Part shown: piece by piece, positions 5,412-61,230 of the stretch
Layout: each line of letters opens with the position of its first letter
How positions within the stretch are numbered: position 1 is the first letter of the stretch
Origin: Basidiobolus meristosporus CBS 931.73
Taxonomy: Eukaryota > Fungi > Basidiobolomycota
Assembly (NCBI GenBank): GCA_002104905.1
Contig: MCFE01000115.1
Location: 1 to 64,000, forward strand
DNA: 64,000 bases
Direction of reading: 5' to 3'
Translations under genes and position numbers: made by a program
The notes under the pieces: model-generated
Databases searched by the model: none
Told to the model about the DNA's origin: nothing
Seen by the model: only the letters and a program-made list of their open reading frames with translations

Positions 5412-6750
5412 CTATTTGGTTTCAACGAGTTGAGGGAATCCATCCGAATTTGGATGTCTGGCTTTCTCATGGAATTGACGTAACAGGGTGTCCACATTCT
5501 CCAAGCTTTGAGGACGAATGTCGGCCAGGAGTTTGATCTGGGCTGTGACATGTTTGACCTGGTCGTCGCTCAAGTCCAAACCGAGCTGCTGAACTCTGTT
5601 CTTGACGGCATTCCAACCAGTAAGTCTGTGGCCGATGGAGACGTATCTGGTCATACCGAAGTCTTCGGGCTTGAGAATCTCATAGGTGGATGGGTTGTTC
5701 AGGATAGCCTTGGCATGGATACCGGCCTTGTGGGTAAAGGCACAGTAGCCGGTGATGTAGTTGTTGAAGGGGACTTGGATGTCGACAGCCTCGGCAATGA
5801 TGTTTTCAATGTCACGAAGCATTTCGAGCTTGTATTTGCCCATGATGTAGTCCTTGTTTGCGACATACATACGAGCACAAAGGCCACCCAGAGGGGTGAT
5901 ACCGTTACGTTCACCAATACCTAGGACAGATGTATCAATGTGGGTGGCACCAGCTTCCAAAGCGGCATAAGCGTTGGCAATGGCACACCCGGTGTCGTTG
6001 TGGAAGTGGCACTCAATGTCGCAAGAGACGACACCGCGCAGAGTGCGAACCAATTCGTAGACCTGACGAGGGTTGGCACAGCCGACGGTATCAGCAATAC
6101 CGACACGGTTAACACCAAGCTTGTCGACGGTACGGTAGATGTTCAGGAGATCAACCAAATCACTACGGAAAGAGTCCTCACTGGAAAAGCGAACCTCCAA
6201 TCCGGTGGATTTGATGTAGTTTACAACCTCGGTGGCCTGTTGAGTGATGTAGTCCATATCCTTTCCGTGGGAGAACTTGCGGAGGAAGGAGGAAGTCCCG
6301 ATAACAACATCCAAGCCATCAACGCCTAGAATGGGATAAGTATGCAGATCTCACGACTATCAAGTTGACTGCTACATACCAGTATCAACGGCCATACGAG
6401 CATCGTCCATATGACAACGAACGTGAGTTAGGATCTTGGCCTTCAAGCCCAACTTGCAGATGGCAATGCAATCATCGCGGGATTGCTCAGATGCAGCAGG
6501 GGAAGTCAACTCAAGATACTCCACGCCAAACTCATCCAAGGCCTTGGCGATCTCAATCTTCTTGGCGGTATCGAAGAAGGCGTTAGCGAACTGCTCGCCC
6601 TCTAGACAAAGAGTTAATATGGGGACTCAGTGGAGCTTAGTTTGAGGGAACAGTACCTCTCAAAGTGGATTCGATGATGGCAAAGTTATCTACTCTGCTT
6701 AAAAAGTCGGACACAGAGCTAGCGTATGGGTTGTTTCTTTGCTCAGACAT
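5412..6750 (-). CDS. LYS20/LYS21: Homocitrate synthase
   Basis: [19 protein letters not shown]; [15 protein letters not shown]; [13 protein letters not shown]; [21 protein letters not shown]. Two introns in the 5' part. Confidence 0.96.
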
Positions 6751-8332: not shown

Positions 8333-9280
8333 TCAACGATGGTGTTGGGCAAGTTCATGAGCTGGGGTCCTTCCAAGCACATCGTCCCGAGTGGTTTCTG
8401 CAGCAGCAAGTATTCTCTCTCTCAGTTTGAGGGATACGCCCAGGTCCTTTGCGGCCTTCATTAGATTCTTCATCACTGCGTCGAAGTGGAAATCGTTTAG
8501 GTCTAACAGACGTCTGTGGGCAGCACGCATTTTAGCCATGTTGATCTTTTTTCCGCCGAGTAAATGGACCAAGAAGGTTGTCTGCATACGCTGAAGTCTC
8601 TCGATGTTGATCCCTTGGAAGAACACCCGGGTTCTGCGATCAGTGAGGTTGTAGTGATAGAACTTCTCCACCATAAGTTCTACGATATCTTCGCCCAAGA
8701 TTTCCAATATGGTAGGCTCGTTGCACTCCGCCTCTTTTGGAATCTCGTACGGATTGACCAAAGGCTGACTGAAGGGGCATTTGGAGGGATTCAGTTGCTT
8801 GTCATCTGGACGACTATTCCTATCTTGGCTAGCCAGCTTTGAGTGATCAAAAGGGCATCTTCCAGGAGACTTTGGAGACCTCAGCTCTCCCGAGATCGCC
8901 GATTCATCAACCGGGCATCTCTCCCTTGTTGCTGATGGGCTGTGTGCTTTGTACAGGCTCGTTTTTGTAACCTGGTTTTCCTGCATCGCCGCGTAAGGAG
9001 AGATTTTGGCATGAACCGATAAGTTAGCAGGGAGGGGATCTGGTTGTTGGAGGAACTCAAAGTCAGTCTTGGATTTGGTAAGGTCATTGCAGGATGCATA
9101 TTTTCTCAGGAATTTCTGTTGAGCGGAGGCTTTCTTAGAGCCGAAGATATTTGAGAAAAAGCCCATGTTGCTGAGAGTGAATTCGAGTATGGGGCTGCTG
9201 TGGTGGGCCATCCGCTTATAAACTGCCATCTGTGCACGAGGATCTAACGTGGTTAAAGTACAAGATAGACCTGGACCCAT
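8333..9280 (-). CDS. Group-1 truncated (2/2) haemoglobin with a long N-terminal extension carrying three Cys-Pro motifs; intronless
   Basis: C-terminal domain VEKFYHY..RVFFQGINIERLQRMQTTFLVHLLGG..MRAAH..FHFDAV fits the trHbN pattern. Upstream motifs RCPV, RCPF, KCPF. Alternative start at 9166 (MGFFSNIFGSKK). Confidence 0.85.
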   Translation of the reverse strand: MGPGLSCTLTTLDPRAQMAVYKRMAHHSSPILEFTLSNMGFFSNIFGSKKASAQQKFLRKYASCNDLTKSKTDFEFLQQPDPLPANLSVHAKISPYAAMQENQVTKTSLYKAHSPSATRERCPVDESAISGELRSPKSPGRCPFDHSKLASQDRNSRPDDKQLNPSKCPFSQPLVNPYEIPKEAECNEPTILEILGEDIVELMVEKFYHYNLTDRRTRVFFQGINIERLQRMQTTFLVHLLGGKKINMAKMRAAHRRLLDLNDFHFDAVMKNLMKAAKDLGVSLKLRERILAAAETTRDDVLGRTPAHELAQHHR

Positions 9281-9843: not shown

Positions 9844-11235
9844 ATGGTGTGGTTGAAATTGGTCATGAGAACGAACACATCACCCAACTCTGCCACACTT
9901 AGTGAGAGGCCTCGCCAAACTAACGAGTTCAGCAATCCAGAAGAGTTCAAAACCCCACCACTCTCTTCCCTGATAGTAATCCTCGTCTGTAACTTCCTCT
10001 TCAACGTCTCTTTCTATATTATAGTGCCTACTGTCACCGGTTATGCCGACTCACTAAAAGCTGATGCTATCTTCGGAGGCCTAGCAATTGGGTGTGTCAC
10101 CTTTGCTTCCATGCTAACCTTAGTGCCCATCAGTCGGCTCTACCCACACCACTATCGCCCGCCACTAGATATCGCTTGTCTAACTCTATTCGTGGGCCAT
10201 GTTTTGTATGCTCTGGCCGACTATACGCAGTTCCTGTATCTGATACTAATAGGACGACTGGTGAACGGCATAGGGTTCACAGGCTGGATGTTCGTCAAAA
10301 AGTACGTCACCGATGGCAATTTGGTTGGTATTAGGCGGCGGACGCTGCTCAGCTCTTTTCTCGTGACCACCCAAGCTGTGGGGATGGTGGTGGGTCCTTT
10401 GCTGGGAGGATTTCTCTCCAGAATGCGCTGGAATTCCGAGGTCAATCCAACTGTCCAACGACTGTTCAATCAATACACAATGCCGGGATGGGTAATGGCG
10501 GTGGTGTGGCTGCTTTTTTGGATTGCCGTGCGCATCTTCTTCAAAGAGGCCCCTCCCCCGAGTTGCTCGATTGATATCGTGGAGAAGCAGAGCGTCGATA
10601 CGGAGAAAGAGGCTCGAGAGCTTTCGTTTACCACACAAAAGCCCAACAAGTATCAATACATGTGCGCTGCACTAATGTGCTTCTTGGCCACTACGGTGTT
10701 CTTGGAGCTTGGGGCTTGGGAATCGAATGTCCCACTGCTGGGCGGCGAGTACTTTAACTGGAACGAGTACAATAGCGGGGTCTTCATTGGCTTGATAGGA
10801 CTGGCTACGTTTCCGTTCGTTTTTCCTTTAAGCTTCCTGGCAAAGCGAGTCCAGGACAGGTTTACTTTAGTGGCCGGCATATGTATAGCTATGGCCGGGT
10901 TAATCCCACAGCTGGTCATTTTGTCAAAGGAAAGGCTGACTTTGGTTTCGTATTCGGCTTGCTGGTTTCTGGTCTGTTGGGGATTTAGCTTGATCAGCAC
11001 CATCACGCTCTCACTCCTCTCGAAAATCCTTCCTGACAAATACAACACCAGAACAAGCGTCATCATTCAATACGCAAACTATCTGGGTAGACTTACTGGA
11101 GCAGTGTGGGGCACCGCAGCAAACAAGGTAGTCGGTGGCATCATCACCATATATGCAGTGGAGATACTGTTCCCATGCATTGCATTGATTGCCATTGCCC
11201 TGCTGTGGCCGCACCTGAAAGCAAAGACCGGCTAG
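9844..11235 (+). CDS. Major facilitator superfamily transporter, intronless
   Basis: 463-aa ORF with about 12 hydrophobic segments; LILIGRLVNGIG and GMVVGPLLGG motifs. Confidence 0.88.
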   Translation: MVWLKLVMRTNTSPNSATLSERPRQTNEFSNPEEFKTPPLSSLIVILVCNFLFNVSFYIIVPTVTGYADSLKADAIFGGLAIGCVTFASMLTLVPISRLYPHHYRPPLDIACLTLFVGHVLYALADYTQFLYLILIGRLVNGIGFTGWMFVKKYVTDGNLVGIRRRTLLSSFLVTTQAVGMVVGPLLGGFLSRMRWNSEVNPTVQRLFNQYTMPGWVMAVVWLLFWIAVRIFFKEAPPPSCSIDIVEKQSVDTEKEARELSFTTQKPNKYQYMCAALMCFLATTVFLELGAWESNVPLLGGEYFNWNEYNSGVFIGLIGLATFPFVFPLSFLAKRVQDRFTLVAGICIAMAGLIPQLVILSKERLTLVSYSACWFLVCWGFSLISTITLSLLSKILPDKYNTRTSVIIQYANYLGRLTGAVWGTAANKVVGGIITIYAVEILFPCIALIAIALLWPHLKAKTG

Positions 11236-36994: not shown

Positions 36995-39900
36995 CAAGCT
37001 GTCACTCTCTGCAATGTCTACTACTGCTATTACTGGAATTTTTCCCTCTGCTGAAAAGTTGGATGGCTCTAACTATCAAGTGTGGAAGGTGAAGATGAAG
37101 ATGCTGCTACAAGAAAGAGGCCTTTGGGATATTGTCATGGGAGAAGAATGCCCTCCTAAAAATGTGGGAGAGGAAGCCTTAAAGTACCAGAAGAAAGAAC
37201 AAAGTGCCTTTAACTGCATTTGCCTTAATGTCAAGGACAAATTGCTAATTCAATGCTCAAGAGCAAAAACGGCAAAGAATGCCTGGAAGGCATTAGAAGA
37301 CACCTACCAGTCATGTTCAGCTGCCAAGAAAATGTATCTGAGAAGAAAATTCTTTACTACAAAGATGCTGCCAGGAGAAGAAATGAAAAATCTAATTAAC
37401 AGAATTACCCTGCTGGTAGATGAGATGGAATCTGTGGGCGTACCAACTACTGATGAGGATGTGATAGTTACCAACCTGAATAGCCTGACAGACAAGTTTC
37501 AGGGCCTTGTATCAGCCCTAGAGTCCAGAACTGAAGATTTGACCTTAAATTACCTATAAGGAAGGCTCCTGGATGAAGAATTAAGAAAATCAAGCGCCAA
37601 TAAGAAGGAAGAAGAAAATGCTTTAATAAGCAATGATAACCAACAAAGAAGGTACCCAAGACCCTACAAAGGCAACGGCAACCTATTTTGCAACTACTGC
37701 AAAAGGAAAGGACACACATCAGACCGGTGTTTCAAAAAGAGAGATTACCAGCAAAAGAAGCCTGAATATGGAAATGCTGCAACAACTGAAGATAGACTAT
37801 TCATATCTGCACTAAATATGACCACAAACAAGGATTCTCAGATGTGGTATATTGACTCTGGAGCTTCTCAACACTTTGCACACCAAAAAGAACTTTTTAC
37901 CCAATATCAAGAAATTCCAATTAAGAAGGTTTTCATGGATGACAATAGAACACTTGGTGCAGTGGGAGAAGGAACTATCCAAGTAAACCTTAGAAGCAGT
38001 GAAGGAAGCCATACACTGACCTTTAAAGAAGTATTCTATGTACCAGAAATAGCCAAGAACCTACTCTCTGTAAGCAAGGCCATAGCAGAAGGACTCAGTT
38101 TCAGTTTTGACAATTCTGGATGCAGGATCATTGATCAAAATGGTGCTCATATTGCTTTGGGTATCAGAGATCAGAATCTATACAAGTTGACTTATATTCC
38201 ATCATATCTCAAAGCCAATATAAGTAACTTAAATGAAGAAACACCAATGCTTTGGCATAGGAGATTTGGGCACATCAATTTTGATTATTTGTGCAAAATG
38301 ATCAAAGATCAGCTAATTCCTGGAGTGAAAATTGATCCCCTGGCTAATTTGGAGCACTGTGAAGCCTGCATATATGGGAAACAAGCCAGACAACCATTCA
38401 AGAGCTCTGGGTTAATCAAAACTAAGAAAAAATTAGATCTAATTCACTCAGATCTGTGTGGAACTATGCAAGATTTATGCTTAGGCGGGATGAAGTATTT
38501 AATCACTTTTATTGATGATTATACAAGATACACATGGGTCTACTTCAGGGAGAGAAAGGAAGAAGCTCTGTCTAAGTTCAGGGAGTTTAAAGCCATGGTG
38601 GAGAGAGAAACTGGTGAAAAAATCAAGAAAATACGCTCTGACAATGGTGGAGAATATACCTCAAAACTCTTCATCCACTTCTGCAAAATTCATGGGATAA
38701 AGCAAGAGACTACTGTACCATACTCCCCACAGCAAAATGGAGTAGCAGAACAAGCTAACAGATCAATAATTGATATGGCAAGATCTATGATCCATGGTCA
38801 AAAATTGTCCTATGATTTTTGGGCGGAATCAGTTGCCACTGCTGTATATCTTAAAAATAGGAGTTATAACAGAATACTTTGTGATTCTACTCCATTTGAA
38901 GCATGGTATAGATACAGACCAAGTGCAGAACATCTAAGAATATTTGGGTGTACTGCATATGCCAAAAAACTGGCCGGAAATCAGTCAAAATTTGAGCCAA
39001 AAAGTGTAAAATGCATATTTTTGGGCTACTGCAATGAGTGCAAGGCATACAGACTCTACAATACCAAAGCAAAGAAGCTGATCAAGTCCAGGGATGTTTT
39101 GTTTGATGAAAATTCAAAACTTTCACCAAAAATGACATCAGATGATGACAAATATTTGAACTCAAGTCCACCAATTGTCAGGATTGGATCAGAGCAAAAC
39201 AATGCAGTTTTTTTCACTCTAGAGGACTCTACAACCATGGTTCAGCCATAATCAGTGCCCAGGAATATTCCAGAAGTGATCATTCCAGTATCAAATGCCT
39301 GGAGATCAAATCAGACAAGAAATAGCCCAAATTACTATATCAATGAGGGTACAAACTTAGCCTATGCCTATTCAGTCCATATTGATGAGCCTCAGACTGT
39401 AAAAGAGGTCCTAAATAGCCCTCAGACAAAGTTTTGGAGATCTGCAATGACTGAGGAATATCAGGCACTGATGGAAAATCAATCCTGGGACTTGGTCAAA
39501 TTACCAATCAACCAAAAATCAATTGGATGCAGATGGGTCTTCAAGACAAAATACAAGGCTTATGGTACAATTGTGAGACACAAAGCAAGACTTGCAGCCA
39601 AAGGATACTCTCAAACAAAAGGACTTGACTATACTGAGACCTTTGCACCGGTAGCCAAGTTTAATTCCATCAGATTAATATTGGCTATTGCAGCCAAATA
39701 TAAGTTTTTTATTCATAAAATGGATGTAAAAACTGCATTTTTGAATGGAGAATTTGATGAGGACATGTATATGGACCAGCCTGATAGGTTTGTTGACCAA
39801 GATAACCCCCATTTGGTCTGCAAGCTTAAAAAGTCACTATATGGTCTCAAACAATCACCAAGAGCCTGGAATTGCAAGATAGATTCTTATTTGGAATCTT

Positions 39901-40958
39901 TGAGTTTCAAAAGAAGTAATGCTGACTATAGTATATACTATAAGCCAGATAGAGCAAATCCAGTTCTATTAGCTCTATATGTGGATGATCTTATTATAGC
40001 CGCCAATAGTCTAGAAACATTGCAAGAGACTAAATCCAGCCTATCTAAGGAGTTCAAGATGTCTGATCTAGGAGAACTCAGTTACTACTTAGAGATTAAG
40101 TTCTCCATAGACAGAAGTACCCAGACTATCACCCAAAGTCAATCCAAGTATATTCAAGATATACTAAAGAAGTACAAAATGGAAGACTGTAAACCAGCAG
40201 CTACCCCAATGGAGACAAACCTTAACTTGGTCAAAACTCAACCAAATCAAGAGAGTTTGGTGCCATTTGAAAGCCCTGACTTTCCTTATCAATCTATGGT
40301 CGGCAGTCTGATGTATATCATGCTTGGAACAGGTCCAGATATCTCATATTCAGTGGGAGTTGTCAGCCAACATAATCAGAACTATGGATCTGATCATATT
40401 GCAGCAGTTAAGCGGATTTTTAGATACCTAAAAGGAACTGCTAATATCTGCTTAAGATACACTTATAAGGATTCAGAACAGGATCTTGTGGGATACTTTG
40501 ATGCCAACTGGGGACAAAATTTAGAAGACAGAAGATCCACCACATGATAAACCTTTCTTTACTGCAAAGGAGCAATTTCATGGAATTCAAGAAAGCAACC
40601 GACCGTAGCACTTTCTACTACAGAGGCAGAGTATATGGCAGCCTGTGAAGCTACAAAAGAAGCAATGTGGTCAAGAGAGCTGTTTACAGATTTAGGCCAT
40701 TGTCAAAAAATGCCTATTACTTTATTTCAAGATAATCAAGGATGTATACAATTAGGTAGAAATCCAACTTTTCATGCCAGAACCAAGCACATAGATATTA
40801 GACATCATTTCATACATGAAGCTATAGAGAATAACTTAGTTAGCTTAGTTTACTGTCCTACAGATGAAATGATTGCAGACATATTTACCAAGCCATTAGC
40901 TAGAGACAAGTTTGAATATCTGAGGTTAAAACTAGGACTAGTCAGTATGAACATTTAG
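36987..40958 (+). pseudogene. Copia gag-pol polyprotein in a single frame with four in-frame stops and no frameshift
   Basis: Gag CNYCKRKGHTSDRC; protease WYIDSGA; integrase HHCC and D-D-E (IDDYT, SDNGGEY, GVAE); RT LYVDDL; RNase H. Stops at 37557, 39249, 40545 and 40548. Confidence 0.92.
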
Positions 40959-58899: not shown

Positions 58900-61230
58900 T
58901 CTAAGATAAGCTGCATATTAGTCCCTTCCAAAATTTCTTGGTAATTGGTGGCTATAAAGAGTTCATTCACATACAGAGCCATTTTCATGTATAACTGGCT
59001 GAGATTTGCTTAACTTGGGGTTATTGACCATAGGGGTAGCTGCAGGTTTGCAATAATCCAATTTTAAGCAGCTAAGAGTGTCTGTGATGTACCTAGACTG
59101 ATTCAGCACAATTCTCTGCGTAGGTATGTCAAACTTGACTTCAATTCCAAGAAAATAGCTCAATTTTCCAAGATCTTCCATCTTATACTCGCTGAAGAGA
59201 TCTGACTTGGCCTGTTTAGGTGCCTCTTGGTCACTTGTAGCTATAATTAGGTTGTCCACATAAAGAACTAGGATGATCACACCCCTCTTGAGCTGTTTCA
59301 CATACATACTGTGATCTGCAGTGCTATAAGAGAACCCAATTTCCTCTAGATATGTGTCAATCATGTTACACCATGCTCCAAGTGCCTGCATAACCCCATA
59401 CAATAATTTTCTAAGTTTGCACACCTTATGGGGGTCTTTTGGATTGGTAAAACCTTCTGGTTGCTCCATATATATAGTTTCTTGCAAATCCCCATTTAGA
59501 AAGGCTATTTTGACATCCATTTGGTGTAGATCTAGACTGTGTATAGTTGTCAGGTCTAGAACTGTCCTAATGGAGTTAAACTTGGTAACCAGAGCAAATG
59601 TTTCTTCAAAGTTTAGTCCCTGGATCTGGGAGTAGCCTTTAGCCACCAATCTAGCCTTATACTTATCAATGGCACCATTTGAGGTTATCTTGATCTTGTA
59701 CACCCATCTACATTCTATTGGCTTTGTCCCATTTGGTAAATGTACCAGTTCCCATGTTTTGCCCTGATCATTGATTAGTACTCCACCTGCATAGCTTGTT
59801 GCCACAAAGTAGCATCTGGACTTTGCATTGCCTGTTCCAGATTCTGAGGTTTGGCACATAAGGCAAGATAAGCTTCTTCACAATCATTGGACGTCTACCA
59901 CCAGGATCCAGAGGCCTTTCTTATTCTGGTAGATTTCCTAACTGGAATAATCTGCTCTGATCTGGAACTGGTAGAATTGTCATCTGTATCTGGCTGAATT
60001 AGGTATGTATCTGCTTCATTGGTGTTAATTGCATTATCAAATAGCTGGTCAATGATTTCAGTGGCTTTGCAATCTGAATTCTCCTCAAATACAATGTCCC
60101 TGCTCTTGATCAACATATGAATTTTGCCATTGTACACTTTATACCCTTTAGTATCTTCACAATACCCAAGAAAGATCCCTTTCCTACTCTTTGGTTCCAA
60201 CTTTGAGTGTTTTTTATCAGGGATGTGATAAAAAACATCACTGCCAAAGATCTTGAGGTGCTGGAGATCTGGTTTTTTGCCTGTATATGTTTCAAAGGGT
60301 GTAGAATCACATAGTGTTGTTGTTGGGCATGTGTTCATGATGTAAAATACGGTAGCAACAGATTCAGCCCAAAACCTGCGGTCCATTCCCTTATTATGTA
60401 GCATAGATCTTCCCATCTCTACTATTGTTTTATTTGCACGTTCTGCTACTCCATTTTGCTGTGGAGTATGAGGAACTGTGGTCAGATGAAGTATAACAGT
60501 AAATGAGCAGTATTTTGCCAACTCCTTTGAACAGCATTCTCCTCCGTTGTCACTTTGTAGTACCTTCAATTTACATCCAGTTTGTGTTTCTGCCATGTTC
60601 TTGAAGTGCTTAAACGTCTCTAAAGCGTTATCCTTTCTTCTGAGGAAGTACACCCATGTATATCTTGTTTTGTCTTCAATAAACATCATAAAGAATCCCT
60701 TGGCTCCAAAGGACAGTGTTCTCATGGGGCCACATATGCCTGAGTGTACAATAGCCAATATTCCGGTGACACTGATGCATTTTGTGCTCTTGAAACATTG
60801 CCTAGCTTGTTTGCCATATCAACATCCCTTACAAACATTCAATTTGACTAGAATTGAGTATTTTAGGCCCAAAACAAGTTGATTTTTCACCAATTGGCTC
60901 ATTTTCTGCTCCCCAATGTGTCCTAGCCTCCTATGCCATGTCTCCCAGTTAGTTTCATCAGTTTCAGCAATCTTGACATACTCAGGTACAAGGATTGTGC
61001 ATTGTAACTTGTTAATACTGTGATCTCCAATTCCCAAAGCTTATTTTGTCCATTTTCCCTCCATATTGAGCAGCTCATATTGGTGAAAACAAATTTCAGT
61101 CACTGAGCAGTTGCTTTACTGACTGAGAGTAGGTTCTTAGCTATTCCAGGTACATGGAGTATGTCAGTCAGTTTTGCTGTTGTTGCCCCTGAGCTATTGC
61201 TCATGTTTAGTTGTATAGACCCACTGGTGG
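58900..61230 (-). mobile_element. Ty1/Copia family 2, second internal fragment (protease, integrase, RT)
   Basis: WHRRLGHIG; SDNGGEC; PQQNGVAERAN; [11 protein letters not shown]; HQMDVKIAFLNG; LYVDNL. DNA-level homology to 47-48 kb. Confidence 0.9.

What the first reader, a model, noticed from the sequence alone, without database searches (positions are those of the whole stretch)
8333..9280. Intronless group-1 truncated haemoglobin fused behind an N-terminal region with three Cys-Pro (heme-regulatory-like) motifs
Seen: the C-terminal about 120 aa has the trHbN signature (B9-B10 Phe-Tyr, CD1 Phe, LxxxQ at E7/E11, GG, proximal His, HFxxV). It is preceded by about 150-190 aa of low-complexity sequence with regularly spaced RCPV, RCPF and KCPF, and a possible MG start (MGFFSNIFGSKK). 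Known: CP dipeptides bind regulatory heme in holocytochrome c synthase, ALAS, Hap1 and HO-2, while bacterial trHbN is a stand-alone NO-dioxygenase. Inference: a heme- or redox-regulated, possibly membrane-tethered (myristoylated) globin, an architecture I do not recognise. Lack of introns is compatible with, but does not prove, bacterial origin.
Basis: partly seen in the sequence, partly recalled or inferred. Interest (0 to 1): 0.72.

Follow-up and report, generated by a model that had tools for sequence, protein, structure and literature searches.

The report
Fungal truncated haemoglobin with Cys-Pro arm
This Basidiobolus gene encodes a small "truncated" haemoglobin behind a floppy 150-residue arm with three conserved Cys-Pro motifs of the type that bind spare haem in other proteins, and the same motif recurs beside related globins in other fungi and algae, hinting at an undescribed way of loading or regulating these globins.

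Summary
Window 8333..9280 (-) is one intact, intronless ORF. Its C-terminal ~116 residues are a group-1 truncated haemoglobin (Pfam Bac_globin; Tetrahymena trHbN E 3e-14; AF2 model TM 0.81-0.88 to solved trHbNs). Homologues place the start at MGFF (nt 9166), giving 277 aa. The genome's own gene model (109 aa, globin only) misses the arm.

The arm is predicted disordered but evolves as coding sequence (pN 0.32 against pS 0.75 versus the B. ranarum orthologue). RCPV, RCPF and KCPF are kept in all four long-form genes. The globin-proximal CPF is in nearly every Basidiobolus paralogue.

CPF also flanks trHbN domains in Syncephalis, Piptocephalis, Entomophthora, Neoconidiobolus and Volvox/Chlamydomonas: 12 seen against 0.8 expected, never inside the globin.

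The globin sits in a clade of early-diverging fungi, so recent bacterial transfer is not supported. Myristoylation is unlikely.

Haem binding by the CP motifs fits the published motif definition and has a precedent in haem oxygenase-2, but it is untested. No RNA data could be obtained.

The scan had already found and followed up this architecture on other DNA of the same genome (paralogue, s1-227472). This is a second copy.

The parts
8333..9166 (-). Most likely coding sequence: 277 aa plus stop, starting at the conserved MGFF methionine
   Evidence: All annotated homologues start at the aligned Met. In-frame stops lie just upstream of it in B. ranarum and B. meristosporus paralogues. It has the best Kozak context of the four in-frame ATGs, with A at -3 and G at +4.
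9167..9280 (-). 38 further in-frame codons with three upstream ATGs; probably 5' leader, not coding
   Evidence: There is no counterpart in any homologue. The -3 positions are weak. No RNA data were available.
9071..9166 (-). Conserved N-terminal motif, residues 1-32 (M-x-F-[FLI]-[ST]-x-x-F-G-x-K-K, then R-x-Y-x-S-x-x-x-L)
   Evidence: Invariant columns M1, F3, F8, K11, K12, R21, Y23, S25 and L29 across three Basidiobolus subfamilies. Function unknown.
8909..8920 (-). CP motif 1, RCPV (Cys84)
   Evidence: R-C-P is invariant in the four long-form genes, and C-P is kept in two of the three full-length short-form (MDFL) genes. It is lost in L003. Predicted disordered.
8849..8860 (-). CP motif 2, RCPF(DH) (Cys104)
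   Evidence: C-P-F is invariant in the four long-form genes and absent from short forms. Predicted disordered.
8744..8782 (-). CP motif 3 and the pre-A segment KCPFSQPLVNPYE (Cys130), 21 residues before the globin domain
   Evidence: C-P-F-x-Q-P-L-x-N-P-Y-E is invariant in long forms. A CP motif lies 14-31 residues upstream of the globin in nearly all Basidiobolus paralogues. AF2 pLDDT is 76-82 with no secondary structure, against about 45-51 for the rest of the arm.
8369..8716 (-). Group-1 truncated haemoglobin (2/2) domain, residues 151-266
   Evidence: Pfam PF01152. PDB sequence matches. AF2 pLDDT is 90 or more, and Foldseek TM is 0.81-0.88 to M. tuberculosis HbN, Tetrahymena, Paramecium and Chlamydomonas trHbs.
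8516..8518 (-). Proximal haem ligand His217 (F8)
   Evidence: Invariant in an 87-sequence alignment. It aligns with the proximal His region of Tetrahymena trHb.
8582..8659 (-). Distal pocket: Tyr170 (B10, nt 8657-8659), Leu191 (E7, 8594-8596), Gln195 (E11, 8582-8584)
   Evidence: In the alignment to Tetrahymena trHb, Y25 aligns with Tyr, Q46 with Leu and Q50 with Gln. The residue roles follow the PDB titles of the Y25F, Q46E and Q50E mutants and of the M. tuberculosis TyrB10/GlnE11 mutants. Coordinates checked.

Best explanation
The gene encodes a 277-residue protein of Basidiobolus (very probably B. meristosporus). It is one of two long-form members of a lineage-expanded family of fungal group-1 truncated haemoglobins. 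Shown: the C-terminal domain has the 2/2 fold and a full haem pocket (His F8, Tyr B10, Phe CD1, Leu E7, Gln E11). That is the distal-site pattern of M. tuberculosis HbN, so O2/NO chemistry such as NO dioxygenation is the likely core activity (inferred). Shown: the N-terminal 150 residues are predicted to be a disordered arm that is nevertheless under purifying selection. The arm's conserved islands are an N-terminal motif and three [RK]-C-P-[VF] motifs. Inferred: these are haem-regulatory-type motifs that bind ferric haem transiently through the Cys thiolate and/or form a thiol/disulfide switch. They would work like the Cys-Pro motifs next to the catalytic core of haem oxygenase-2, capturing haem and handing it to the globin pocket, or tuning its haem occupancy or stability to haem supply and redox state. 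The globin-proximal CPF is the ancestral, near-universal element. The two distal motifs are an elaboration of the long forms.
For: The arm is coding. Against the B. ranarum orthologue, pN is 0.32 and pS is 0.745 in the arm, and pN is 0.047 in the globin. The reading frame is kept in four genes of two species.

CP motif conservation is shown.

All three motifs fit the published definition: a Cys-Pro core, basic on the N side, hydrophobic on the C side (PMC2742820).

There is a precedent for Cys-Pro motifs beside a haem-binding core that help load haem and act as a redox switch: haem oxygenase-2 (PMC2742820; PMC8808069 citing PMC7170523).

The motif is linked to the domain beyond this genus. Among non-Basidiobolus relatives CPF occurs 12 times against 0.78 expected, and the reversed FPC occurs once. 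Every CP-hydrophobic motif lies outside the globin domains. Most lie within about 25 residues of a domain end, typically 14-25 residues before one or 9-19 residues after one. The bearers include Syncephalis, Piptocephalis, Entomophthora, Neoconidiobolus, Volvox and Chlamydomonas incerta.

The globin domain itself has no Cys.

The CP3 segment has raised AF2 confidence, 76-82.
Against: There is no biochemical evidence of any kind. Haem binding by CP motifs cannot be read from sequence, and many CP dipeptides bind nothing.

No RNA run was listed, so transcription and the start codon rest on conservation alone.

The 12 CPF occurrences collapse to about six independent lineages, because several proteins are close relatives or isoforms.

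The Kickxellomycotina and chytrid relatives examined and one Basidiobolus paralogue (P0029/L006) lack the motif. It is therefore not essential for the globin.

In one relative the motif is the last four residues (CPFK), which could be a prenylation box instead.

The complex test of arm segment against globin plus haem gave no verdict.
Confidence: 0.5

Rival explanations
1. The CP cysteines are redox or NO-responsive thiols (disulfide, S-nitrosation) that do not bind haem. They would switch the arm's conformation or the oligomeric state, coupling the globin's NO/O2 chemistry to thiol signalling.
For: In haem oxygenase-2 the C-terminal Cys-Pro cysteines were first characterised as a thiol/disulfide switch near cellular redox potential rather than as haem ligands (PMC2742820). 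The long forms have three CP cysteines 20-26 residues apart, which could pair. The cysteines sit next to a domain likely to handle NO.
Against: Most paralogues and all the non-Basidiobolus examples with one CPF have no partner Cys for an intramolecular disulfide. The strict conservation of Pro and Phe after the Cys is typical of haem-type motifs and is not required for a simple redox thiol.
Confidence: 0.2
2. The proximal CPF cysteine acts on the globin's own haem. It would be either a reversible sixth ligand (a Cys/His hexacoordinate resting state displaced by ligand or reduction) or a covalent thioether to a haem vinyl.
For: The CP3 segment is the only part of the arm with raised AF2 confidence, consistent with docking on the domain. 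CPF lies within 9-25 residues of either end of a domain in different lineages. Solved cyanobacterial trHbNs include a form with a covalent protein-haem linkage (PDB 2hz2 title).
Against: No coordinates or contacts were available to show that Cys130 can reach the iron or a vinyl. The distal pocket already has a complete Tyr B10/Gln E11 set. The complex prediction gave no verdict.
Confidence: 0.1
3. The CPF motifs and the N-terminal motif are short linear motifs for partner binding or localisation (for example a reductase, a membrane, lipidation or a degradation signal) and are unrelated to haem.
For: The arm is predicted disordered with islands of conservation, the usual signature of linear motifs. 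The N-terminal motif is hydrophobic and basic.
Against: No known partner-binding or lipidation consensus matches R/K-C-P-F in internal positions. The recurrence of the same tripeptide beside the same haem domain in distant eukaryotes points to a link with the domain's cofactor.
Confidence: 0.15
4. The arm is not part of the protein. The gene product would be the globin domain alone, as in the genome's existing 109-aa model, and the CP motifs would be chance features of an untranslated leader.
For: The deposited model for this locus and several paralogues covers only the globin. No RNA data were available.
Against: The frame stays open and alignable over about 150 codons in four genes although synonymous sites are saturated (pS about 0.75), and pN is less than half of pS. 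The deposited short models begin mid-domain or at internal Met residues and are visibly truncated relative to their own ORFs. The B. ranarum annotation calls the full length.
Confidence: 0.04

Closest known systems
Group-1 truncated haemoglobins (trHbN): M. tuberculosis HbN, Tetrahymena pyriformis trHb, Chlamydomonas THB1/LI637
   Same: Same 2/2 fold (TM 0.81-0.88). Same haem pocket: His F8, Tyr B10, Phe CD1, Gln E11. Sequence E-values down to 3e-14.
   Different: The solved proteins are stand-alone domains with at most a short pre-A segment. This one has a 150-residue arm, predicted disordered, with three Cys-Pro motifs and a conserved N-terminal motif. The AB hinge has one Gly (LGED) instead of Gly-Gly.
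Fungal T1 globins reported earlier (Batrachochytrium dendrobatidis single domain; Allomyces macrogynus 1129-aa chimera), Hoogewijs et al. 2012, PMC3287990
   Same: It belongs to the same rare fungal T1 class. The B. dendrobatidis protein (P0059) falls in the same well-supported clade.
   Different: That census lists T1 globins only in one chytrid and one blastocladiomycete. Here there are about a dozen paralogues in each of two Basidiobolus species, plus members in Entomophthoromycotina, Zoopagomycotina and Kickxellomycotina, and a Cys-Pro arm that the chytrid protein lacks.
Haem oxygenase-2 with its C-terminal haem-regulatory motifs
   Same: It is a haem-binding core flanked by a flexible segment carrying Cys-Pro motifs of the basic-CP-hydrophobic type. 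Those motifs act as a redox switch and help load haem into the core. This is an analogy of mechanism only.
   Different: The folds are unrelated and the chemistry differs (haem degradation versus a stable haem cofactor). Here the motifs are N-terminal and nothing has been measured.
Classical haem-regulatory-motif proteins (Hap1, ALAS, Bach1, IRP2, Rev-erb)
   Same: The motif grammar is the same. CP2 reads RCPFDH, close to the Hap1-type K/R-C-P-V/I-D-H consensus, which is my own recollection and was not checked in a paper here.
   Different: Those are regulators or enzymes whose activity, import or turnover responds to haem. None is itself a globin.
Paralogue in the same genome (L005:2117-2995, 292 aa; scan note s1-227472) and B. 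ranarum K7432_005340 / K7432_014779
   Same: Identical architecture, with all three CP motifs and the N-terminal motif. K7432_005340 is the orthologue, with 92% identity over the globin domain.
   Different: Arm sequences between the motifs have diverged almost completely. The window copy has extra in-frame upstream ATGs.

Membership tests
Group-1 truncated haemoglobin (Pfam PF01152 Bac_globin, T1/trHbN) | Profile match above the curated threshold | tested here: met
   31.9 bits against a cut-off of 21, E 1.7e-7, covering profile positions 8-119 of 121.
Group-1 truncated haemoglobin (Pfam PF01152 Bac_globin, T1/trHbN) | 2-on-2 helical fold | tested here: met
   AF2 domain pLDDT is 90 or more. 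Foldseek TM is 0.81-0.88 and rmsd 1.8-2.4 Å to solved trHbNs.
Group-1 truncated haemoglobin (Pfam PF01152 Bac_globin, T1/trHbN) | Proximal His F8 and Phe CD1 | tested here: met
   H217 and F183 are the two invariant columns of the 87-sequence alignment.
Group-1 truncated haemoglobin (Pfam PF01152 Bac_globin, T1/trHbN) | Tyr B10 and a polar E7/E11 distal network | tested here: met
   Y170 aligns with Tetrahymena Y25, and Q195 with Q50 (E11). E7 is Leu (residue roles from the PDB titles).
Group-1 truncated haemoglobin (Pfam PF01152 Bac_globin, T1/trHbN) | Gly-Gly hinges at the AB and EF corners | tested here: inconclusive
   The EF Gly-Gly is present (G204-G205, nearly invariant). The AB corner has a single Gly (L-G-E-D), where Tetrahymena has G-G.
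Group-1 truncated haemoglobin (Pfam PF01152 Bac_globin, T1/trHbN) | Group 1 rather than group 2 or 3 | tested here: met
   All sequence hits at E below 1e-5 are group-1 proteins. Group-2 structures rank lower, at E above 2e-3.
Group-1 truncated haemoglobin (Pfam PF01152 Bac_globin, T1/trHbN) | Binds haem b and a diatomic ligand | not testable with these tools
   Needs expression and spectroscopy.
Haem-regulatory motif (HRM, Cys-Pro motif) | Cys-Pro core flanked by a basic residue on the N side and a hydrophobic residue on the C side (definition in PMC2742820) | tested here: met
   R-CP-V, R-CP-F and K-CP-F; definition read.
Haem-regulatory motif (HRM, Cys-Pro motif) | Lies in a flexible, exposed segment | tested here: met
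   CP1 and CP2 lie in a region with pLDDT about 45-51. CP3 lies in a coil with pLDDT 76-82.
Haem-regulatory motif (HRM, Cys-Pro motif) | Conserved in orthologues (functional constraint) | tested here: met
   C-P is invariant at all three sites in four long-form genes. CP3 is present in nearly all paralogues.
Haem-regulatory motif (HRM, Cys-Pro motif) | Binds Fe(III)-haem through the Cys thiolate, with a functional consequence | not testable with these tools
   Needs hemin titration of the protein or peptides and Cys-to-Ala variants. This is the defining property, so the protein is not filed as a proven member.
N-myristoylated proteins | Gly2 plus an N-myristoyltransferase-compatible context, conserved with the motif | tested here: not met
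   Gly2 is present only in long forms. Sister subfamilies with the same N-terminal motif have Asp or Asn. Phe follows the Gly, which is excluded by the PROSITE PS00008 pattern as I recall it.
Recent bacterial-to-fungus gene transfer | Nearest relatives are bacterial and the gene nests among bacterial sequences | tested here: not met
   The nearest named relatives are Kickxellomycotina, Entomophthoromycotina, Zoopagomycotina and chytrids. One clade with 99% SH-aLRT support holds all of them with Basidiobolus. That clade also contains 20 unnamed sequences whose origin is unknown.

The most novel reading that the evidence does not exclude
CPF is an ancient, dedicated haem-handling module of eukaryotic group-1 truncated haemoglobins. 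It would be a short Cys-Pro-Phe element placed within about 25 residues of either end of the globin domain, catching labile haem (or sensing its redox state) and controlling cofactor loading of the adjacent globin. It would be retained or repeatedly recruited in Zoopagomycota fungi, volvocine algae and alveolate-like protists, and multiplied to three copies in the Basidiobolus long forms. That would be the first built-in haem-regulatory arm described for any globin.
Probability: 0.3. Interest if true: 0.75.

Novelty: new variant of a known kind. Interest (0 to 1): 0.58.

Why it matters
How haemoproteins obtain their haem inside eukaryotic cells is still largely open, and truncated haemoglobins of eukaryotic microbes have few assigned functions. 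A globin that carries its own haem-regulatory-type motifs would give a simple, testable system (one small soluble protein, three cysteines) for asking two questions. Can such motifs act as cofactor-loading or haem-sensing devices for a neighbouring haem domain, as proposed for haem oxygenase-2? And why has the gut-associated fungus Basidiobolus multiplied this family? The finding also extends group-1 truncated haemoglobins from two isolated fungal cases to a whole clade of early-diverging fungi. It shows that the deposited gene models for this family are systematically truncated.

Tried and rejected
RNA evidence: the look-up of sequencing runs listed no run for the locus. Read laying could therefore not be used, and transcription and the 5' end remain untested.

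Complex prediction on arm residues 96-149 against globin 150-277 with haem gave no verdict (ipSAE 0.01). It is not evidence either way.

The protein-atlas search on the arm gave no usable hit.

Literature: no paper combines 'heme regulatory motif' with 'truncated hemoglobin'. The two papers with 'globin domain' are unrelated.

Myristoylation was rejected (see the membership test). Recent bacterial transfer was rejected on the tree.

The 315-aa reading from the first ATG was rejected in favour of the conserved Met.

A glutaredoxin-like CPFC/CPYC active site was considered and rejected. There is no second Cys after the motif and no thioredoxin fold.

The divergent MFS transporter was checked as a possible functional partner. 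It has only a generic MFS_1 match and no solved relative, and the upstream side of the gene cannot be compared in B. ranarum because that contig ends 730 bp upstream.

'Arm restricted to Basidiobolus' therefore rests only on the top 150 rows of the exhaustive search.

No model coordinates are exposed, so the Cys130-to-haem distance could not be measured.
Full report
**1. What is in the sequence**

Window 8333..9280 on the minus strand is one uninterrupted ORF of 315 codons. Pfam places a Bac_globin domain (PF01152) at ORF residues 196-301, above the curated threshold (31.9 bits against 21).

A sequence search of all solved structures finds only group-1 truncated haemoglobins at the top:
- Tetrahymena pyriformis trHb, E 3.4e-14
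- cyanobacterial GlbN
- Chlamydomonas LI637 and THB1
- Paramecium trHb
- M. tuberculosis HbN

An AlphaFold2 model built on an 87-sequence alignment gives pLDDT of 90 or more over the domain. Foldseek matches it to these same structures at TM 0.81-0.88.

I number from the MGFF methionine. The haem-pocket residues are F169-Y170 (B9-B10), F183 (CD1), L191 (E7), Q195 (E11), G204-G205 and H217 (F8). All were verified by coordinate. H217 and F183 are the only fully invariant columns in the 87-sequence alignment.

The residue roles follow the alignment to Tetrahymena trHb and the names of its Y25F, Q46E and Q50E mutant structures.

**2. Where the protein starts, and whether the arm is real**

All annotated homologues start at the Met aligned with ORF residue 39 (MGFF, or MDFL in a sister subfamily). 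In B. ranarum and in a B. meristosporus paralogue an in-frame stop lies 20-32 codons upstream of that Met, with no intervening ATG. In the window this Met (nt 9166) has the only strong initiation context of the four in-frame ATGs. I therefore read the product as 277 residues, nt 8333..9166.

The genome's own deposited model for this locus is a 109-residue fragment of the globin only (P0005). Three other B. meristosporus models are likewise truncated relative to their ORFs.

The evidence that the arm is translated is evolutionary. Against the B. ranarum orthologue, synonymous sites are saturated (pS 0.75-0.81). Non-synonymous divergence is 0.32 in the arm and 0.047 in the globin. The frame is preserved in four genes from two species.

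No RNA run could be listed for the locus, so there is no direct evidence of transcription.

**3. The arm**

AF2 predicts residues 1-125 as disordered (pLDDT about 45-51). Confidence then rises to 76-82 over residues 131-150, without secondary structure, just before the globin.

Within the divergent stretch between residues 33 and 129, the only contiguous invariant blocks in the four long-form genes are R-C-P (83-85) and C-P-F (104-106). They are followed by the block C-P-F-x-Q-P-L-x-N-P-Y-E (130-141).

The three motifs read RCPV, RCPF(DH) and KCPF. Each fits the published definition of a haem-regulatory motif: a Cys-Pro core, usually preceded by a basic residue and followed by a hydrophobic one (PMC2742820).

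The protein has five cysteines. None is in the globin and three are in these motifs.

The proximal motif is the oldest. A CP motif lies 14-31 residues before the globin in nearly every Basidiobolus paralogue, including the short forms. One paralogue (P0029/L006) lacks it.

A second conserved island is the extreme N-terminus (M-x-F-[FLI]-[ST]-x-x-F-G-x-K-K, then R-x-Y-x-S-x-x-x-L). It is shared by three subfamilies.

**4. Myristoylation**

Gly2 is present in the long forms. The sister subfamilies keep the rest of the N-terminal motif with Asp or Asn at that position. The residue after Gly is Phe, which the N-myristoyltransferase consensus disfavours (PROSITE PS00008, from my own knowledge).

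**5. Relatives and origin**

A word-based search found only Basidiobolus proteins at full length. For the domain alone it found many paralogues from the two species.

An exhaustive HMMER search of 1.84 billion representatives found 654 hits. The highest-scoring non-Basidiobolus hits are eukaryotic proteins with many tandem trHbN domains. Examples are the diplonemid Lacrimia with 12-14 domains, Perkinsus, and volvocine algae.

The most similar single domains belong to early-diverging fungi:
- Mycoemilia, Dispira and Ramicandelaber (Kickxellomycotina)
- Entomophthora and Neoconidiobolus
- Syncephalis and Piptocephalis
- the chytrids Batrachochytrium and Homolaphlyctis

In a maximum-likelihood tree of 159 domains, one clade with 99% SH-aLRT support holds all Basidiobolus, all other Zoopagomycota and both chytrid sequences. 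Sixteen Basidiobolus paralogues form one group next to the Kickxellomycotina. The tree has few columns and 20 unnamed members in that clade, so the detail is soft.

The picture is nevertheless a fungal gene family expanded in Basidiobolus, not a recent bacterial acquisition. Lack of introns carries no weight, since the neighbouring MFS gene is also a single uninterrupted ORF.

The 2012 census of fungal globins knew group-1 T globins only from Batrachochytrium and Allomyces (PMC3287990).

**6. The motif recurs beside related globins**

Among the non-Basidiobolus proteins retrieved (56,363 residues), CPF occurs 12 times against 0.78 expected from composition. The reversed tripeptide FPC occurs once, and CP occurs 35 times against PC 9 times.

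None of the CP-hydrophobic motifs lies inside a globin domain. Most lie within about 25 residues of a domain end, typically 14-25 residues before a domain or 9-19 residues after one.

The named bearers are:
- Syncephalis, in the linker between two domains
- Piptocephalis, in the linker and the tail
- Entomophthora and Neoconidiobolus, in the C-terminal tail
- Volvox africanus and Chlamydomonas incerta, after the last domain

One metagenomic protein has KKCPFSNNPIKNP, close to the window's KCPFSQPLVNPYE.

After collapsing isoforms and close relatives this is about six independent lineages. The statistic is therefore suggestive rather than overwhelming. Within three of those lineages, however, the tripeptide is kept while the surrounding tail has diverged.

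**7. How it most likely works**

Shown:
- a complete trHbN haem pocket with the Tyr B10/Gln E11 pair
- a selected arm, predicted disordered, with three motif-grade Cys-Pro sites
- an association of CPF with this domain across eukaryotes

Inferred:
- The domain performs O2/NO chemistry, most likely NO dioxygenation, as documented for M. tuberculosis HbN (my own knowledge).
- The Cys-Pro sites bind ferric haem transiently and/or form a thiol/disulfide switch.
- This is analogous to haem oxygenase-2, where Cys-Pro motifs flanking the catalytic core respond to cellular redox state and contribute to haem transfer and loading (PMC2742820; PMC8808069 citing PMC7170523).

I put about 0.5 on this reading. 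The rivals are thiol-only redox or nitrosation switches (0.2), partner or localisation motifs (0.15), direct ligation or covalent attachment to the globin's own haem (0.1), and an untranslated arm (0.04).

A complex prediction of arm segment against globin plus haem returned no verdict and is not used as evidence.

**8. Relation to earlier scan notes**

The scan had already flagged and followed up the same architecture on another piece of this genome (s1-227472, 879 letters). I retrieved that paralogue independently. It is L005:2117-2995, 292 aa, with motifs RCPY, KCPFDH and KCPFDQ, and it aligns motif for motif with the window gene.

The present locus is thus the second long-form copy, and the orthologue of B. 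ranarum K7432_005340. Another note (s1-231418) describes a trHb-sensor globin fusion in the same genome, which corresponds to the outlying Basidiobolus sequences P0060 and P0065 in my tree. These notes are not independent evidence for the mechanism.

**9. Verdict**

It is a new variant of a known kind, a group-1 truncated haemoglobin with a built-in haem-regulatory-type arm. I found no description of it in the searched literature, but the scan has already recorded it once.

Interest is moderate to high for globin and haem-trafficking specialists. It is limited by the complete lack of biochemical or expression data.

Noticed in passing
window 8369-8695 (-) and loci L003, L004, L005: The deposited B. 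meristosporus gene models of this globin family are systematically truncated. The window's own model is a 109-aa globin fragment (P0005). P0007, P0012 and P0006 begin at internal positions of ORFs that extend upstream to include the CPF motif and, in L003 and L005, the N-terminal motif.
   Followed up: yes
window 9071-9166 (-): A conserved N-terminal element is shared by three Basidiobolus globin subfamilies. After the hydrophobic-basic start comes L-R-K-Y-A-S-C-N-D-L, with hydrophobic at -5, basic at -4/-3, Ser, and hydrophobic at +4. As I recall the consensus, this resembles an AMPK/Snf1-type phosphorylation site. The short forms keep only R-x-Y-x-S-x-x-x-L.
   Followed up: partly
window 9167-9280 (-): There are three extra in-frame ATGs (nt 9280, 9229, 9211) upstream of the conserved start, all with weak -3 context. 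If they are transcribed they would act as an N-terminal extension or as leaky-scanning decoys. They are absent from the homologues.
   Followed up: partly
proteins P0017, P0019/P0169, P0018, P0020: Giant proteins made of tandem group-1 truncated haemoglobin domains occur in protists: Lacrimia lanifica (1882 aa, 12-14 domains), Perkinsus olseni (up to 2375 aa), Astrephomene (5 domains), and unnamed metagenomic ones.
   Followed up: no
proteins P0137 (Entomophthora muscae) and P0092 (Neoconidiobolus thromboides): These single-domain fungal trHbNs have a C-terminal tail with a CPF motif and end in CaaX-like boxes (CVIQ; CSIN after a Lys-rich stretch). This suggests prenylation and membrane attachment.
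   Followed up: no
locus L006:2501-3034 (P0029): One B. meristosporus paralogue has an N-terminal extension without any Cys-Pro motif. It is a natural CP-less comparator for experiments.
   Followed up: partly
window 9844-11235 (+): An intronless 463-aa major-facilitator transporter is transcribed divergently from the globin gene, with about 680 bp between the starts. It has only a generic MFS_1 match and no solved relative. Whether the pairing is conserved could not be checked because the B. ranarum contig ends too soon.
   Followed up: partly
window 30000-64000; ORFs 37818-39251 and 39255-40547 (+), 58963-59859 and 59895-60758 (-): G+C drops from about 0.45-0.55 to about 0.37-0.40 after about 30 kb. 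This half holds at least two Ty1/copia-type LTR retroelement copies (integrase, RVT_2), each with its pol reading frame interrupted.
   Followed up: partly
window 5412-6314 (-): An ORF fragment with HMGL-like and homocitrate synthase post-HMGL domains, probably an exon of a homocitrate synthase (lysine biosynthesis) gene.
   Followed up: no
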